Shown here: positions 33,565-38,555 of the stretch, piece after piece | How positions within the stretch are numbered: the first letter of the stretch is position 1 | Layout of the letters: each line of letters starts with the position of its first letter | Assembly (NCBI GenBank): GCA_001643675.2 | Contig: LSRY02000012.1 | Span: 1,364,001-1,428,000, forward strand | From: Monocercomonoides exilis PA203 | Taxonomy: Eukaryota > Protista > Preaxostyla | Length of the DNA stretch: 64,000 nucleotides | Direction of reading: 5' to 3' | Program-made: the position numbers and the translations under genes | Notes under the pieces: model-generated | What the model saw: the letters and a program-made list of their open reading frames with translations, nothing else | Database searches by the model: none | What the model was told of the DNA's origin: nothing

Positions 33565-34908
33565 ATGTTCCATAATGCAAGGGAAATGCTTTTAAAATTC
33601 AACTATTCTAAGCCTCCACAGTTGAAAAGATTCATTGATTCCCATTCAGAACAGGAACAAATTTTTGAAGATAATTTTGAAATAGATGAACAAATACGCT
33701 TGAAATCGGAGAGGAACGACATTTTACAAAAGGAAATAGATGAAATAAAGAAGGAAGAAAGAACATCACAGATGAAATTGGAAATGCTGACTTCAAATTC
33801 AATGAAACTTTCTTCAAAATTGCTCAAATTATCAAAGCATCATAACCAAACGACTGATGAAAAAAATGCAAATGTCAAAAATGTGGAATGCAAGAATGAA
33901 GAAGCAACTACCCCTTTCGTGCAGAATACTAAAAAAGAACAACAAGAAAAACAGATAGAAAATACCAATCAAAAAATTGGAGTAAAAAAAACAAAATTGT
34001 CCATTTCCCAACAAAGCAACACTCGAACAATCAACTGTGGACCACCTTCTCCAGCAGTTCAATTACCAATTCAGATCAAGACTCACTTCGCTTCGGTGAG
34101 AAGCAATCCTTGTGTTCAACCACCATCAATAAATTCAACAGTAAAAAAGATTTCAATTACTCCAAAAAGAAAAATTAATCAATTGCAAGCAAGTTCTCCA
34201 GATTCAAGTTTGAAGCCTCAAGAGTCACCTTCATCCATAAATTCCTTTATTCAATTACCTTCAACTGACAAAGATTTGGATGATTCCGAAAAATTGAATG
34301 AAGCCACACTTCAGTTAAGGGATTCTCAAGAAGAGGAAAGCGATGATTCAGGTGCAACTAAGACTTCATCGCGTTTGAGATCAAATTTATCCACTTCATT
34401 GCCTTTATCTTCTGACATCGAATCCAATTCATTAACCTTCACGAGCACACATTCACTAACCACTTCACATGTTTCTGAATCACATCAAGTTAATATTTCC
34501 TCAACCTCCGAACGTTCAGCTTCCTCTCGCAAAGATTCCTCAACCCCTCCGCCATCAAAAACAACATGCTCCCCTTCGAAATCACTTAAAACATCTTTGT
34601 TTTCTTTGCAATCACCAGCTTTACTGAATCATCATTTACTCCTTCCTTCTTCTCATGATGACTTGCAATCGGAAAATGAAAAAACTTATTCATCTTCAGA
34701 GAAAAAACTCACTTCTCCTCATTCACTTCCTAGAACTCGTCCTCGTCCTCATCAATCAATATCTACTTCAATAAATATTTCAGAGAAAGTGAAGTCACCG
34801 CTACTTTATTCGGAAGAGCTTAGCAAACCATCTGAAGGGAAAATGGAATTTTCAAATACAAAAAATGATAACAATGATGATTTATCGAACAAAAATCTTA
34901 ATAAATGA
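33565..34908 (+). CDS. Hypothetical protein, N-terminal coiled coil and Ser/Pro-rich remainder
   Basis: 447-codon ORF in AT-rich DNA. No family recognised. Confidence 0.6.
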   Translation: MFHNAREMLLKFNYSKPPQLKRFIDSHSEQEQIFEDNFEIDEQIRLKSERNDILQKEIDEIKKEERTSQMKLEMLTSNSMKLSSKLLKLSKHHNQTTDEKNANVKNVECKNEEATTPFVQNTKKEQQEKQIENTNQKIGVKKTKLSISQQSNTRTINCGPPSPAVQLPIQIKTHFASVRSNPCVQPPSINSTVKKISITPKRKINQLQASSPDSSLKPQESPSSINSFIQLPSTDKDLDDSEKLNEATLQLRDSQEEESDDSGATKTSSRLRSNLSTSLPLSSDIESNSLTFTSTHSLTTSHVSESHQVNISSTSERSASSRKDSSTPPPSKTTCSPSKSLKTSLFSLQSPALLNHHLLLPSSHDDLQSENEKTYSSSEKKLTSPHSLPRTRPRPHQSISTSINISEKVKSPLLYSEELSKPSEGKMEFSNTKNDNNDDLSNKNLNK

Positions 34909-35090
34909 AAAAATTTGGATGTTTTATGTAGTTTCATTTTAAGCGATAATTTTTTCCTTTTTCGTTGAGATTTTTTGTAAAATTTTAAAGATTTTAAAAC
35001 AAATTATAACGGTTAGATCTAATTATTGAAAAAGGGATTTTAATAGATCAAGTCTATTTGACGAGTTTGTCCTCGTTGGAATTTAAGGCC

Positions 35091-36675
35091 ATGTCTTCTA
35101 CAACTCAAAGTCCTTTAACACTTAAACGTAAAGAGGTGCAACAAGCAGATAACGCTAATCTTGCAATTCAACTTCAACAATGGATTTCATCCGTTTTGGG
35201 TCAGCAAGTGTCATTGCCCAACGATTTAGCATCCGGTGTTGTAATATGCAAACTTATAAATAAAATCCATCCAGGTTCAATAGGCAAATTTAATGAAAAT
35301 CCAAATGCAGTTTTTCAGAAAGTTGAAAACCATCAAGCTGTATGTCTTTTTTTTTTCATTTTCCGTTGATACAAATGAAATACATAAACTTTTTCAAGAT
35401 AAACGCTGCACTGAAAAAGATCGGCATCCCTGCCTCTGACCTTCCTGAGGCAATTGATTCAGCAAACGGAAAAGCTGATCCTCGTCTTCTGAATATTATC
35501 AATCGTCTTAGAGCTCATTCAAACATTAAATCAGCTTCTGTTTGCAAAGCAATTGAAAAGAAATCGAGATTGGATCATACCCGCAAAGGAATGATTCGCA
35601 AAGTTAGAAAGTGGTTGAAGCATGAACTCAAAAAGCCTGTGAACATCCCTGAAGATCTTCGGAAAGGAGCTGTTGTCTGCGAAGCAATTAACAAATTGTG
35701 CCCAAAACTTATTGAGGAATTCGATGCAGATCCAAAGAACGTCATTGCACAAACTGCAAACTGGAAGAAAGTACTTTTTTTGATTATTTTTCTTTTTAAT
35801 AAAATAATTTTTGTTTAAAACAATAGATTAATGCAGCACTCATCAAATGTGCCGTTGCTCCATCAGAATTACCAAATGCCGTCAAAGCTGCAAAAGGAGA
35901 ATCTGATGCGCATGTCATTTTCCTCGTGTACAAATTGAGCAATCGTGCAAAAACACTTCGTGTTGCTCCCGAAAGTGTTGTGAAGAAGATTGCAAACAAA
36001 GAAGCAAGAATTCGCAAGAGATTTGCACAGAAGAAAGAAAGAAAGATTGAAGCACTGCGAGAGAGAACAATGGGTGCAATTCGTGCTGCGAAATACAACC
36101 GCAAATACAAGAAGGATAGAAAGAAGAGAATTATGCTCCATCGCAAAGCCGAAAAGAAAGGCAACTTCTATGTTCCACCAGAACCCAAGCTTGCCTTTGT
36201 GATGCGTCTGCGTGGTGTGAATGGAGTTCCACCAAAGCAAAGAAAGATTCTCCAATTGTTCCGTCTTCGTCAAATCCACAACGCTGTCTTTGTTCGCCTC
36301 ACAAAAGCAACACTCAACATGCTCAAAGTCATTGAGCCATATGTTGCCATTGGATATCCCAGTGTCAGAACCATCCGTGCTCTTCTCGTTAAGCGTGGAT
36401 ATGCAAAGATTAATGGACAGAGAATTCCTCTCACTTCAAACAAAGTGATTGCACGTGCATTGGGCAGATACAAGATTAAGACATTGGACGATTTGATCTG
36501 GCAAATTGTGACAATCGGAAGACACTTTGCCAAATGCAACCGTTTCTTGTGGCCATTCAAGATGAACTCTCCAAGAGGAGGATACAAGAAGAGCAAATTG
36601 AGACACTTTGTCGAAGGAGGAGCAGCAGGAAATAGAATGGGAATGATTAACAGATTGATAAGAAGATGTCTTTAA
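35091..36675 (+). CDS. RPL7: 60S ribosomal protein L7 (uL30) fused downstream of two calponin-homology domains; 489 aa; exons 35091-35339, 35399-35770, 35827-36675
   Basis: uL30 motifs: VAPESVVKK, GNFYVPPEPKLAFVMRLRGVNGVPPK, LRQIHNAVFV, FLWPFKMNSPRGG, HFVEGGAAGNR. CH1: WISSVL...DLASGVVICKLINKIHPGSI...ENHQA. CH2: WLKHEL...DLRKGAVVCEAINKLCPKLI. Two phase-0 GT-AG introns join all three exons in frame. Confidence 0.9.
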
Positions 36676-36902
36676 GAAATTACACAAACAACAAAAGAGA
36701 AAAAGAAGAAATGGCTTTCGTATACTTGCTTTTATAATTTTAATAACATTTCAGCAAGAATACGGATAACAATGTAAAAAATAAAACAAAACTGAAAAAA
36801 TATTTATCAACAAAAAAACAATAAAAATCTGATCATAAAATTCAATAAATGGCTATTGATCAAATATACAATCTTTAAATAAACTTCAACATAACTTTGA
36901 TA

Positions 36903-38555
36903 ATGGATCAGATGAATAGAATGATAGAAGAAAAAGAAGCATTTTGCGCAGAGGAGGTGGGGGAGGAGTTAAAAGCGGAAGTGGAGGCGGAAGGGGAAAT
37001 GGAAGGAGAAATAGAGGAAAGAGGAGCGGAGGAGGGCGGAGAGTGGAAAGGAGCGGGGGTAGCGGGGGTAGCGGAAGAAGCGCCGATGCGGACGTATTTC
37101 CACTCGGTGCCGGCTGTGGGGGAGGTTGTGGAGCGGGCAGCGTCGCTGGTGTCGCAGATTGCGGAGCTGAGCCTGGGTTATGCGGCGCGGGTGGTGGGGA
37201 GCGGGGAGGAGCGGGAGGTGCGATGCTGCGAGGTGTGCGGGAAGACGAACCTGGCGGGGCTGGCGCGGGAGGTGATGGAGGAGCGGGCGCGGGAAGGGCG
37301 GCGGACGAGCGAGCGGGACAGCGTGGTGCAGGTGCGGAAGGGGCGGTTTGGGGAGGAGATGCGGGGGACGCTGGTGCGGATCCTGGGGGTGCTGTGTGGG
37401 ACGTTCCGGATCCGGACGACGGAGGTGATCCAGGGGGTGGTGCTGTTTGACCGGATCTGCAAGACGCACTACTGGTGCTCGACGTTTATCGAGCTGTTCC
37501 GGAACTCGCTGAAGACGCTGTTTGTGGTGTGTGTGCTTGCGGCGCACAAGGGGAGTGCGGACATCACGATCCGGAACAGCTGCTGGGCAGAGGCGTTTGG
37601 GCTGCCGGTGAAGACGATGTGGCAGTTTGAGCGGTCGTGCCTGGACCTTCTGGACTGGAACACGAATGTGAGCCAGCGGGAGTATGTGGGGTTTCGGCGG
37701 CTGATCTCAGGGGAGCTGCCTGAAGCGGGAGCAGCAACTGCCACCATCAATTCATTTTCAACTTCGTCTTCATCTTCATCATCTTCTTCGTCTTCGTCAT
37801 CGTCATCGAGTTCAATGGATGTGGGAGAAGAAAGAGGGTGCAACGGGAGACGTGGGTGTGAGTGTGGAAGAAAAGAATCGGGGAGATTTGGAGGGAAAGA
37901 GGAGGTGCTTTGGATGCGATTTGGGGAGATGGAGGTGGGAGAGGACGATCTTATTGATGGAGCGAAAGTGGATGAAGATGCAGAAACCGAAAATGAAATT
38001 GAAACTGAGACTGAAGCTGAAAACGAAAGTGAAACAGAAATTGAAACTGAAAATGAAATTGAAACTGAAAATGAAAACGAAAGCGAACGGGAACACAGCT
38101 GCGCAAAATGCGAAGAAAATGAATTTGAAAATTCAAAAGAAATTGAAAAGGAAAACGATAAGAAAGTTGTTGAAAAATTGTGTGAAATTAAAAGAGAGAA
38201 TGTGGATATTGAGAGAAAAAGTGATTTTGATTTCACTGTGGATAATCGTGATGAATCCGATCATTTGGGAGAAAGGAATCATTTATTCGAAAATATAATG
38301 TCCCAGTTATTATCGCAACAGTCATTTGAAAACAATTCTCAGATTTATGAATTTGCTGCTTTGTTTTATAAGCAATACCTTCATGCAAATTATGGTATTG
38401 TTCAAAACGAGTGTATGAAAGATACAAAGGAGTTATTACCTTCTAACGATTTAGTTAATAATACATTGTTCATAAATGATATGAAAGTTGAACCATGTGT
38501 TTCTCAAGGAATCATGCAAGTTGGATTGAATTATGAGCAAAAGGAAAAGTTTTAA
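36903..38555 (+). CDS. PHO80/PCL-type cyclin-fold protein, copy 2 (same core as copy 1, different C-terminus)
   Basis: About 416 aa identical to 29628-31163, then a unique ~130-aa tail. Confidence 0.7.
   Translation: MDQMNRMIEEKEAFCAEEVGEELKAEVEAEGEMEGEIEERGAEEGGEWKGAGVAGVAEEAPMRTYFHSVPAVGEVVERAASLVSQIAELSLGYAARVVGSGEEREVRCCEVCGKTNLAGLAREVMEERAREGRRTSERDSVVQVRKGRFGEEMRGTLVRILGVLCGTFRIRTTEVIQGVVLFDRICKTHYWCSTFIELFRNSLKTLFVVCVLAAHKGSADITIRNSCWAEAFGLPVKTMWQFERSCLDLLDWNTNVSQREYVGFRRLISGELPEAGAATATINSFSTSSSSSSSSSSSSSSSSSMDVGEERGCNGRRGCECGRKESGRFGGKEEVLWMRFGEMEVGEDDLIDGAKVDEDAETENEIETETEAENESETEIETENEIETENENESEREHSCAKCEENEFENSKEIEKENDKKVVEKLCEIKRENVDIERKSDFDFTVDNRDESDHLGERNHLFENIMSQLLSQQSFENNSQIYEFAALFYKQYLHANYGIVQNECMKDTKELLPSNDLVNNTLFINDMKVEPCVSQGIMQVGLNYEQKEKF
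36912..38159 (+). repeat. 1248-bp inverted repeat, right arm
   Basis: Starts ATGAATAGAATGATAG and ends GAAAACGAT. Matches the reverse complement of 29892-31139. Confidence 0.95.

What the first reader, a model, noticed from the sequence alone, without database searches (positions are those of the whole stretch)
35091..36675. Ribosomal protein uL30 (RPL7) fused to two calponin-homology domains: candidate built-in ribosome-cytoskeleton tether
Seen: three ORF fragments join via phase-0 GT-AG introns (35340-35398, 35771-35826) into one 489-aa frame, CH1-CH2-uL30. The uL30 part has no in-frame ATG before its conserved N-terminal VAPES motif, and CH2 runs into it within a single exon, so it cannot be made as a separate normal L7. 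The uL30 part is well conserved and looks like cytosolic L7. Known: CH domains bind actin or microtubules, tandem CH pairs often form actin-binding modules, and the eukaryotic L7 N-terminal extension lies on the solvent side of 60S. Inference: 60S subunits carrying this protein could dock on filaments (e.g. axostyle or cortical arrays) to localise translation, or define a specialised ribosome class. CH2 is notably basic, so it might instead bind rRNA expansion segments. I know of no described CH-L7 fusion but cannot search for one.
Basis: partly seen in the sequence, partly recalled or inferred. Interest (0 to 1): 0.92.

Follow-up and report, generated by a model that had tools for sequence, protein, structure and literature searches.

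The report
Ribosomal protein uL30 carrying calponin-homology domains
In the oxymonad Monocercomonoides exilis and its relatives, every gene for the core large-subunit ribosomal protein uL30 (L7) is fused to a calponin-type CH domain, and this copy has two, so their ribosomes probably carry a built-in docking module whose partner is still unknown.

Summary
The three exons (35091-35339, 35399-35770, 35827-36675) give a 489-aa CH1-CH2-uL30 protein. RNA contigs from three libraries splice both GT-AG introns exactly. The model already exists in NCBI as MONOS_13479, "putative 60S ribosomal protein L7-3" of Monocercomonoides exilis, with no mention of CH.

The fusion is not a one-off:
- All five near-identical uL30 genes in this genome carry a CH domain in frame. 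Only this copy has two.
- The only other uL30-like genes are two RPL7L1/Rlp7-like paralogs.
- Blattamonas, Streblomastix and four unnamed oxymonad-like contigs have the single-CH fusion.
- No other lineage showed it among 1.84 billion representative proteins or in 79 other metagenomic uL30 loci.

The CH part is under purifying selection (dN/dS about 0.04-0.1) and models as a CH fold closest to calponin.

CH1 is the ancestral CH. CH2 is a Monocercomonoides-specific duplicate.

The tandem-CH actin-binding reading is not supported, because both domains are single, calponin-type CH. A cytoskeletal tether remains possible but untested. No paper describing the fusion was found.

The parts
35052..35090 (+). 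minimal 5' UTR
   Evidence: RNA contig X1 record 1 starts at 35052. There is no ATG between 35052 and the start codon.
35091..35339 (+). exon 1 coding part: conserved N-terminal leader (PLTLKRKEV) and the N-terminal half of CH1
   Evidence: Translation. Pfam CH 1.6e-8. The leader motif is shared with L027, L015 and P0006.
35340..35398 (+). intron 1, 59 nt, phase 0, GT..AG, inside CH1
   Evidence: Joint 35339>35399 in contigs of X1, X2, X3 and X6.
35399..35770 (+). exon 2: C-terminal half of CH1, basic linker, N-terminal half of CH2
   Evidence: Translation. Pfam CH 8.1e-5 on residues 68-112 of the exon. Residues 53-124 of the exon are 86-88% identical over the aligned residues to the first coding exon of paralogs C27 and C56 (71% over 91 residues for C55).
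35771..35826 (+). intron 2, 56 nt, phase 0, GT..AG, at the same position inside CH2 as intron 1 in CH1
   Evidence: Joint 35770>35827 in X1, X2, X3 and X6. An intron sits at the same position in the four paralogs and in L015.
35827..36675 (+). exon 3: C-terminal half of CH2 running without a break into complete uL30, then the stop codon
   Evidence: Translation. Pfam L30_N and L30. The same 282-aa (290 in C15) open frame is present in all five paralogs.
35169..35509 (+). CH1 domain (protein residues 27-120, interrupted by intron 1): the ancestral-type CH
   Evidence: Pfam on P0268: CH 66.6 bits in two stretches, best stretch 27-120; CH_2 35.3 bits. PDB phmmer: calponin-1 CH 8.2e-9. In the tree it falls on the side of the other genera's CH.
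35600..35955 (+). CH2 domain (about residues 151-250, interrupted by intron 2): a Monocercomonoides-specific CH type shared by all five paralogs
   Evidence: Pfam. AF2 models of paralog P0001 give a CH fold, pLDDT about 75-85. All top Foldseek hits are CH domains. The CH2 clade has 100/99 support.
35968..36180 (+). uL30 eukaryote-specific N-terminal helical domain (PF08079)
   Evidence: Pfam 4.4e-11. AF2 gives a long helix at 124-185 of P0001. This part contacts ES7L in solved ribosomes (PMC10281867).
36193..36345 (+). uL30 core domain (PF00327)
   Evidence: Pfam 7.1e-18.

Best explanation
This is a real, expressed three-exon gene (MONOS_13479 of Monocercomonoides exilis). It encodes the cytosolic large-subunit ribosomal protein uL30 with two calponin-type CH domains at its N-terminus.

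The CH-uL30 fusion arose once, before the sampled oxymonads diverged, with a single CH. It is constitutive: every uL30 gene in this genome has it. Inferred from that: every 60S subunit carries at least one CH domain unless the domain is cleaved off.

The window copy keeps the ancestral CH (CH1, with the ancestral N-terminal leader) plus a lineage-specific internal duplicate (CH2). The four other paralogs keep only CH2.

The CH sits about eight residues ahead of the uL30 N-terminal helix, which lies on expansion segment ES7L at the solvent-exposed back of the 60S. Inferred: the CH is displayed there as a docking module. Its partner is not known. A cytoskeletal filament (microtubule or actin) is the leading candidate; a ribosome-structural or rRNA contact is the main alternative.
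For: Gene and transcript:
- Exon-wise Pfam hits.
- Exact splice joints, and a contig linking exon 1, exon 2 and the start of exon 3, in three RNA libraries.
- Identical public protein P0268.

Constitutive:
- There are five uL30 loci at 98-100% identity. Each has the CH C-terminal half in the uL30 exon and an upstream CH exon with a start codon.
- The only other L7-like genes are 34-35% identical, lack CH, and best match human RPL7L1.

Conserved:
- CH-uL30 occurs in Blattamonas (P0006, P0272), Streblomastix (P0005), P0003, P0004 and L027 as intron-free contigs of 1.17-1.19 kb, and in genomic L015 with the same intron position.
- Among the M. exilis paralogs, dN/dS in the CH is about 0.04-0.1.

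Restricted:
- Only the P0006 cluster matched the CH part of the profile among the best 150 of 1.84 billion representatives.
- Only 1 of 80 metagenomic uL30 loci has it.

Fold and type:
- AF2 CH model with pLDDT 74.5. Top Foldseek hits are calponin-2, NAV2, parvin, Vav3, GAS2 and EB1 CH.
- Profile against PDB: calponin-1 CH at 3.5e-12.

Position on the ribosome:
- The uL30 N-terminus contacts ES7L on the back of the LSU (PMC10281867).

CH1 ancestral:
- Tree and the shared leader motif.
Against: - There is no protein-level evidence that the CH stays on mature ribosomes.
- RNA contigs cannot exclude a minor internal transcription start.
- Nothing identifies a binding partner.
- The calponin CH domain by itself is, from my own knowledge of the literature (Gimona and Mital 1998), neither necessary nor sufficient for F-actin binding, so similarity to calponin does not predict filament binding.
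- The AF2 models rest on only six sequences.
- The CH2 type alone scores below Pfam's CH cut-off (22.7 against 26 bits).
Confidence: 0.65

Rival explanations
1. One reading: the CH pair is an actin-binding (or microtubule-binding) module that physically tethers 60S subunits or translating ribosomes to filaments such as the axostyle, localising translation.
For: - CH domains are the commonest filament-binding fold. Structural neighbours include the GAS2 CH3 domain bound to F-actin and EB1/SPEF1 bound to microtubules.
- CH1 passes the cut-off of the SPEF1-type CH_2 family (35.3 against 27 bits).
- All the CH domains are basic, which suits acidic actin or tubulin tails.
- The domain is exposed on the solvent side.
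Against: - The closest relatives are single calponin/transgelin-type CH domains, not the type 1 + type 2 pair of alpha-actinin-like actin-binding domains.
- The conserved state is one CH, not two.
- The genome has ordinary multi-CH fimbrin-like genes for actin work.
- No binding data exist.
Confidence: 0.3
2. The CH is a structural ribosome element: a basic globular extension that packs on ES7L or neighbouring proteins and stabilises or replaces rRNA/protein elements, with no outside partner.
For: - All the CH domains are basic (pI 9.2-10.3).
- The linker to the ES7L-bound helix is short.
- Lineage-specific extensions of uL30, uL4 and eL6 co-evolve with ES7L (PMC10281867).
- The fusion is constitutive in every paralog.
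Against: - The CH fold is not known as an RNA binder (my own knowledge).
- eL28, the neighbour at this site, is present in the genome, so it is not being replaced.
- The M. exilis ES7L was not examined.
Confidence: 0.2
3. The CH is a removable pro-domain or assembly aid, comparable to the ubiquitin moieties fused to eL40 and eS31, and is absent from mature ribosomes.
For: There is precedent for cleaved N-terminal fusions on ribosomal proteins (my own knowledge). Purifying selection would fit this reading too.
Against: No protease site or ubiquitin-like fold is present. No precedent for a cleaved CH is known to me.
Confidence: 0.08
4. Annotation or assembly artefact: two neighbouring genes (a CH protein and L7) are wrongly merged.
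For: Merged models do occur. For example, a LOB-uL30 protein in the representative library (P0126) looks like one.
Against: - The CH2 C-terminal half and uL30 share one exon with no stop and no AUG between them.
- Splice joints are seen in RNA.
- The same architecture occurs in five paralogs and at least six other taxa, including intron-free contigs.
Confidence: 0.02

Closest known systems
Cytosolic ribosomal protein uL30 (RPL7; Pfam PF08079 + PF00327)
   Same: The C-terminal 237 residues are a complete, highly conserved uL30. They are 51-54% identical to vertebrate and fungal L7 and keep the VAPES start, the long N-terminal helix and the L30 core.
   Different: It carries 252 extra N-terminal residues forming two CH domains (about 120 residues and one CH in the paralogs and orthologs). 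Canonical L7 has about 10 residues before the (V/A)PES motif.
Calponin / transgelin-type single CH domain (type 3 CH; PF00307)
   Same: These are the best sequence and structure matches: calponin-1 CH 3.5e-12, calponin-2 CH as top Foldseek hit, and transgelin clusters in the ESM Atlas.
   Different: There are no calponin repeats or other calponin/transgelin parts. The domain is fused to a ribosomal protein, only 18-23% identical to solved CH domains, and basic.
Tandem-CH actin-binding domain of alpha-actinin, spectrin, filamin and fimbrin
   Same: Two CH domains in a row in this one copy.
   Different: Both domains are calponin-like duplicates of each other (about 33-38% identical), not a type 1 + type 2 pair. 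The conserved ancestral state is a single CH. Alpha-actinin and fimbrin score only 1e-3 to 1e-2.
Ubiquitin-fused ribosomal proteins eL40 and eS31 (my own knowledge)
   Same: A conserved, constitutive N-terminal fusion of an unrelated globular domain to a core ribosomal protein.
   Different: Those fusions are pan-eukaryotic and the ubiquitin is cleaved off. Here the domain is CH, the fusion is restricted to oxymonads, and cleavage is unknown.
RPL7L1 / Rlp7 (uL30-like ribosome biogenesis factor)
   Same: Same L30 fold family.
   Different: Separate genes for it exist in this genome (C54, C28; 34-35% identical, no CH; best PDB hit is human RPL7L1).

Membership tests
uL30 / RPL7 (cytosolic) | Ribosomal_L30_N (PF08079) followed by Ribosomal_L30 (PF00327), both above the curated cut-offs | tested here: met
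   43.4 bits (cut-off 31.6) and 64.6 bits (cut-off 23) on exon 3. The same hits on P0268.
uL30 / RPL7 (cytosolic) | Orthology to canonical L7 rather than to RPL7L1/Rlp7 | tested here: met
   51-54% identity to animal and fungal L7 over 83-90% of exon 3. Distinct RPL7L1-like genes lie elsewhere in the genome.
uL30 / RPL7 (cytosolic) | Stoichiometric component of the mature 60S subunit | not testable with these tools
   Inferred only from the absence of any CH-less uL30 gene and from strong constraint on the uL30 part (dN about 0.01).
Calponin-homology (CH) domain, PF00307 | Profile match above the gathering score | tested here: met
   P0268 scores 66.6 bits in two stretches (cut-off 26). Exon 1 alone scores 35.1. 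The CH2 type alone is below the cut-off (22.7-23.2), but all six orthologs match, best at 2.8e-9.
Calponin-homology (CH) domain, PF00307 | Compact all-helical CH fold with four main helices | tested here: met
   AF2 model of P0001 residues 1-124 has pLDDT 74.5. The 50 listed Foldseek PDB hits are CH or CH-like (HOOK) domains, TM 0.47-0.77.
Tandem-CH actin-binding domain (type 1 + type 2 CH) | An N-terminal type 1 CH followed by a type 2 CH, conserved as a pair | tested here: not met
   Both CH domains are nearest to calponin-type CH. The pair exists in one of five paralogs and in none of the orthologs.
Microtubule-binding CH (EB1 / SPEF1 CH_2, PF06294) | Profile match above the gathering score and specific similarity to EB1/SPEF1 | tested here: inconclusive
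   CH_2 scores 35.3 bits (cut-off 27) on CH1, but it overlaps the stronger PF00307 hit. SPEF1 scores 1.2e-4 and EB1 about 0.04-0.06, against calponin 3.5e-12.
Filament-binding protein (functional) | Binds F-actin or microtubules | not testable with these tools
   Needs co-sedimentation or imaging. Complex prediction was not run: a filament interface spans several protomers, and a negative result would say nothing.

The most novel reading that the evidence does not exclude
Every ribosome of oxymonad flagellates carries a built-in calponin-type CH domain on uL30, at the solvent-exposed back of the 60S. Monocercomonoides adds a paralog with two. The domain docks ribosomes directly onto the cytoskeleton (axostylar or cortical microtubules, or actin). 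That would be the first case of a core ribosomal protein that is itself a filament-binding protein, and of ribosome heterogeneity (one CH or two) encoded by paralogs.
Probability: 0.25. Interest if true: 0.9.

Novelty: new variant of a known kind. Interest (0 to 1): 0.7.

Why it matters
Core ribosomal proteins almost never acquire foreign globular domains, and when they do (the ubiquitin fusions) the domain is removed. Here a whole order of eukaryotes has replaced its normal uL30 with a CH-bearing version, and that version is under purifying selection. If the CH stays on the ribosome, oxymonad ribosomes offer a natural, testable system for how ribosomes can be wired to the cytoskeleton or to other partners. 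The one-CH and two-CH paralogs would also be a simple case of genetically encoded ribosome heterogeneity.

The sequences are already public, annotated only as "L7". In the searchable literature I found no description of the fusion. A cryo-EM map or a ribosome proteome of M. exilis would settle it quickly.

Tried and rejected
1. Searching the 5.8-billion-protein set with the CH part of P0004 returned only P0004 itself. This says nothing, because of the word index and the size of the database.
The full-length alignment was used instead.
3. P0128 matched the profile from position 64 and looked like a second fusion. Its extension is a lysine-rich low-complexity tail with no CH, so it was rejected.
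4. The idea that the CH replaces a missing eL28 at the ES7L site was rejected, because eL28 genes are present.
5. The tandem actin-binding-domain reading was rejected (see the membership test).
6. The two distant L7-like genes as the "real" ribosomal uL30 were rejected. They are 34-35% identical and their best PDB hit is RPL7L1, though by a small margin (6.5e-26 against 9.4e-25).
7. Complex prediction was not run. CH-filament interfaces involve several actin or tubulin protomers, no partner is claimed with confidence, and a "no support" result would carry no weight.
8. The M. exilis ES7L was not examined.
9. The exons were never joined into a typed or script-built protein for any search or fold. 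Searches were made exon by exon by reference, and then with the public protein P0268 that a tool returned. Its identity to the three exon translations was checked by substring positions only.
11. Whether Paratrimastix or Trimastix uL30 carries a CH could not be determined directly. No labelled sequence appeared in the lists.

Full report
**1. The observation**

An ATG at 35091 opens an 83-codon exon ending at 35339. A 59-nt GT..AG intron follows, then a 124-codon exon (35399-35770), a 56-nt GT..AG intron, and a 282-codon exon (35827-36672) with its stop at 36673-36675. Both introns are phase 0.

Searched exon by exon against Pfam:
- Exon 1 matches the calponin-homology domain PF00307 (1.6e-8, above the cut-off).
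- Exon 2 matches it again in its second half (8.1e-5).
- Exon 3 matches Ribosomal_L30_N (4.4e-11) and Ribosomal_L30 (7.1e-18).

Each CH domain is split by an intron at the same place, after ...ENHQA and after ...ANWKK, and each is followed by INAAL. The second half of CH2 runs into uL30 inside exon 3.

**2. Transcripts**

One search for sequencing runs gave four metatranscriptomic RNA libraries from one study and one run of the organism itself. Contigs of X1, X2, X3 and X6 were laid on 34600-37000.
- All show joints 35339>35399 and 35770>35827 with GT..AG ends.
- No contig covers the introns or the flanks beyond 35052 and about 36786.
- In X1 a single 671-nt contig runs 35052-35339, then 35399-35770, and ends with 11 letters identical to the start of exon 3. 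The CH1-specific exons are therefore spliced onto the uL30 exon.
- Contigs break further on where the five paralogs are nearly identical, as expected for de Bruijn contigs. They cannot show transcript ends or levels.

**3. Identity and public record**

The best protein hits name the organism as Monocercomonoides exilis. The assembly has 82.3 Mb in 101 contigs. The 90%-identity cluster of the best hit contains P0268: 489 aa, KAH7827471.1 / XP_067731328.1, gene MONOS_13479, "putative 60S ribosomal protein L7-3". The three exon translations sit in it at offsets 0, 83 and 207 and fill it completely.

So the gene model is already public, but its name says nothing about CH. On P0268, Pfam gives CH 66.6 bits in two stretches, CH_2 35.3 bits, L30_N and L30.

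That step was left out, and the stored public protein was used by reference instead.

**4. It is not one odd gene**

A six-frame search of the whole genome with the uL30 part finds five loci at 98-100% identity (C6 = this window, C15, C27, C55, C56) and two at 34-35% (C54, C28).
- In all five, the open frame of the uL30 exon extends upstream through a CH C-terminal half (INAAL...). Upstream, across a short GT..AG intron at the same position, lies a CH N-terminal half with its own ATG: MPAEKK/MPASKK in three paralogs, MVFPIAQ in C15. These are the annotated 357- and 365-aa proteins P0001, P0269, P0270 and P0002.
- The two distant genes start directly with an L7-like N-terminus, have no CH, and best match human RPL7L1 in pre-60S structures. 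The margin is small, 6.5e-26 against 9.4e-25.
- In P0268 the only methionines before residue 289 are residues 1 and 148, and VAPES starts at 253.

The genome therefore has no way to make a canonical CH-less uL30 from an AUG. From this I infer, without having shown it, that its ribosomes carry CH-uL30 unless the CH is cut off after translation.

**5. Conservation and selection**

The fusion is present in:
- Blattamonas nauphoetae (P0006, P0272);
- Streblomastix strix (P0005, partial);
- three intron-free contigs of 1.17-1.19 kb, each with one ORF of 357-373 aa (P0003, P0004, L027);
- a genomic contig, L015, where the intron sits at the same CH position and the CH C-terminal half and uL30 share one exon.

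Outside this group I found none.
- A profile of six fusion proteins was run against 1.84 billion representative proteins. It matched through the CH part only in the P0006 cluster; the other listed hits start at profile position 118 or later. The one exception, P0128, has a lysine-rich tail and no CH.
- Of 80 metagenomic uL30 loci, only L027 has the CH.
- Solved Giardia and Trichomonas ribosomes list uL30 chains of 235 and 239 residues. The assignment of those entries to these organisms is from my memory.

Among the M. exilis paralogs, dN/dS in the CH halves is about 0.04-0.11 for C6 against C27/C55/C56, and about 0.1 against C15 where dS is saturated. For the uL30 part it is about 0.03-0.05 in the comparisons with C6 and C15, and zero or near zero among C27, C55 and C56. 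The CH is under purifying selection.

**6. Which CH is which**

CH1 and CH2 of this gene are only about a third identical (18/54 and 14/37 in the two halves).
- In a maximum-likelihood tree of ten CH domains, the CH2-type domains of all five M. exilis paralogs form one clade (support 100/99) on a long stem. CH1 falls with the CH domains of the other genera, unresolved among them.
- The N-terminal leader of this gene (PLTLKRKEV) recurs at the N-terminus of L027 (MTLKRKEV), L015 (PMTLKRN) and Blattamonas (PMTIKRN). The other four M. exilis paralogs lack it.

I read this as follows. The ancestral oxymonad gene was leader-CH-uL30. In the Monocercomonoides lineage the CH, with its intron, was duplicated in tandem. 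The window gene keeps both copies, and the other four paralogs have lost the ancestral CH1 and acquired a new start. This order of events is an inference: the tree is unrooted and short.

**7. Fold and type**

AlphaFold2 on P0001 with its five orthologs gives a helical domain at residues 8-115 (pLDDT about 76-87), an eight-residue linker, and then the long uL30 helix at 124-185. The CH part folded alone has pLDDT 74.5.
- All 50 listed Foldseek PDB hits are CH or CH-like (HOOK) domains, TM 0.47-0.77. The best by E-value are calponin-2, NAV2, parvin, Vav-3, GAS2, beta-PIX, EB1 and transgelin, with no hit below E = 1e-3.
- By sequence, the ortholog profile hits calponin-1 CH at 3.5e-12, then alpha-PIX, SPEF1 (1.2e-4), Vav, and EB1 only at about 0.04-0.06.
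- CH1-CH2 of P0268 behaves the same way.
- The ESM Atlas look-alikes are transgelin/calponin clusters.

These are single, calponin-type (type 3) CH domains, not the type 1 + type 2 pair that forms the classical actin-binding domain. The genome has ordinary multi-CH fimbrin-like genes elsewhere. All the uL30-linked CH domains are basic, pI 9.2-10.3.

**8. Where it would sit**

[quoted passage not shown] The alignment shows that the CH replaces the roughly ten residues that precede the (V/A)PES motif in canonical L7. The CH should therefore be held by a short linker at the end of that helix, on the outer surface, away from the subunit interface and the exit tunnel. eL28 is encoded in this genome.

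**9. How it most likely works**

Shown:
- a fused, spliced, expressed gene;
- a constitutive and conserved fusion;
- purifying selection on the CH;
- a CH fold of the calponin type.

Inferred:
- incorporation into 60S with the CH exposed near ES7L;
- a function as a docking module.

The partner is open. My estimates:
- about 0.3 for a filament (microtubule or actin) tether;
- about 0.2 for a purely structural or rRNA-packing role;
- about 0.1 for a cleaved pro-domain;
- the rest for other protein partners.

Calponin-type CH domains are often protein-protein modules rather than filament binders. From my own knowledge, the calponin CH is neither necessary nor sufficient for actin binding. This is why I do not rank the tether higher.

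**10. Novelty**

Full-text searches found no description of a CH-uL30 fusion:
- calponin homology with L7, uL30, oxymonad or Monocercomonoides;
- Preaxostyla with ribosomal protein;
- the four gene identifiers.

The Preaxostyla genome paper mentions ribosomal proteins only as completeness markers. The library does not cover subscription-only papers.

Those notes are not independent evidence, but I verified the paralogs myself.

I class the finding as a new variant of a known kind: a bona fide uL30 with an undescribed, lineage-wide domain architecture.

**11. Verdict**

Interest is 0.7.

Noticed in passing
window 35827-36672 compared with paralog loci L009-L012: Between the C15 paralog and the other four, synonymous divergence is 0.24-0.40 in the uL30-coding part but above 2 (saturated) in the adjoining CH-coding parts of the same genes. 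This suggests gene conversion that homogenises only the uL30 part, or very strong codon constraint there.
   Followed up: partly
P0161 and P0126 (representative library): Other uL30 proteins have foreign N-terminal domains. P0161 has an EF-hand pair ahead of a complete uL30. P0126 has a plant LOB domain ahead of uL30, which probably reflects a merged gene model. Their organisms are unknown.
   Followed up: partly
window 36897-38555 (+), especially 36940-37550: Just downstream lies a 552-aa open frame with a strikingly G+C-rich, Gly/Glu/Ala-rich start, serine runs and acidic repeats, in an otherwise A+T-rich region. Long open frames overlap it on both strands.
   Followed up: no
window 33565-34908 (+): The upstream neighbour is a 447-aa serine-rich, low-complexity open frame ending 183 nt before the uL30 start codon. 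No RNA contig of the laid runs covers its last 300 nt.
   Followed up: no
window 35689, and 36459-36633: RNA contigs of all runs read A where the genome has T at 35689; this is synonymous (ATT to ATA). Several contigs carry paralog-like variants in the 3' part of exon 3. One X2 contig leaves the locus right after the stop codon with 255 unmatched letters. These contigs are probably built partly from paralog transcripts.
   Followed up: no
G000 C12:246843-247913 and C35:325930-327000: There are two loci with three consecutive strong CH matches in open frames of about 400 aa (fimbrin/plastin-like), and three giant open frames (3,900-4,800 aa) each with one CH, on C16, C22 and C24.
   Followed up: no
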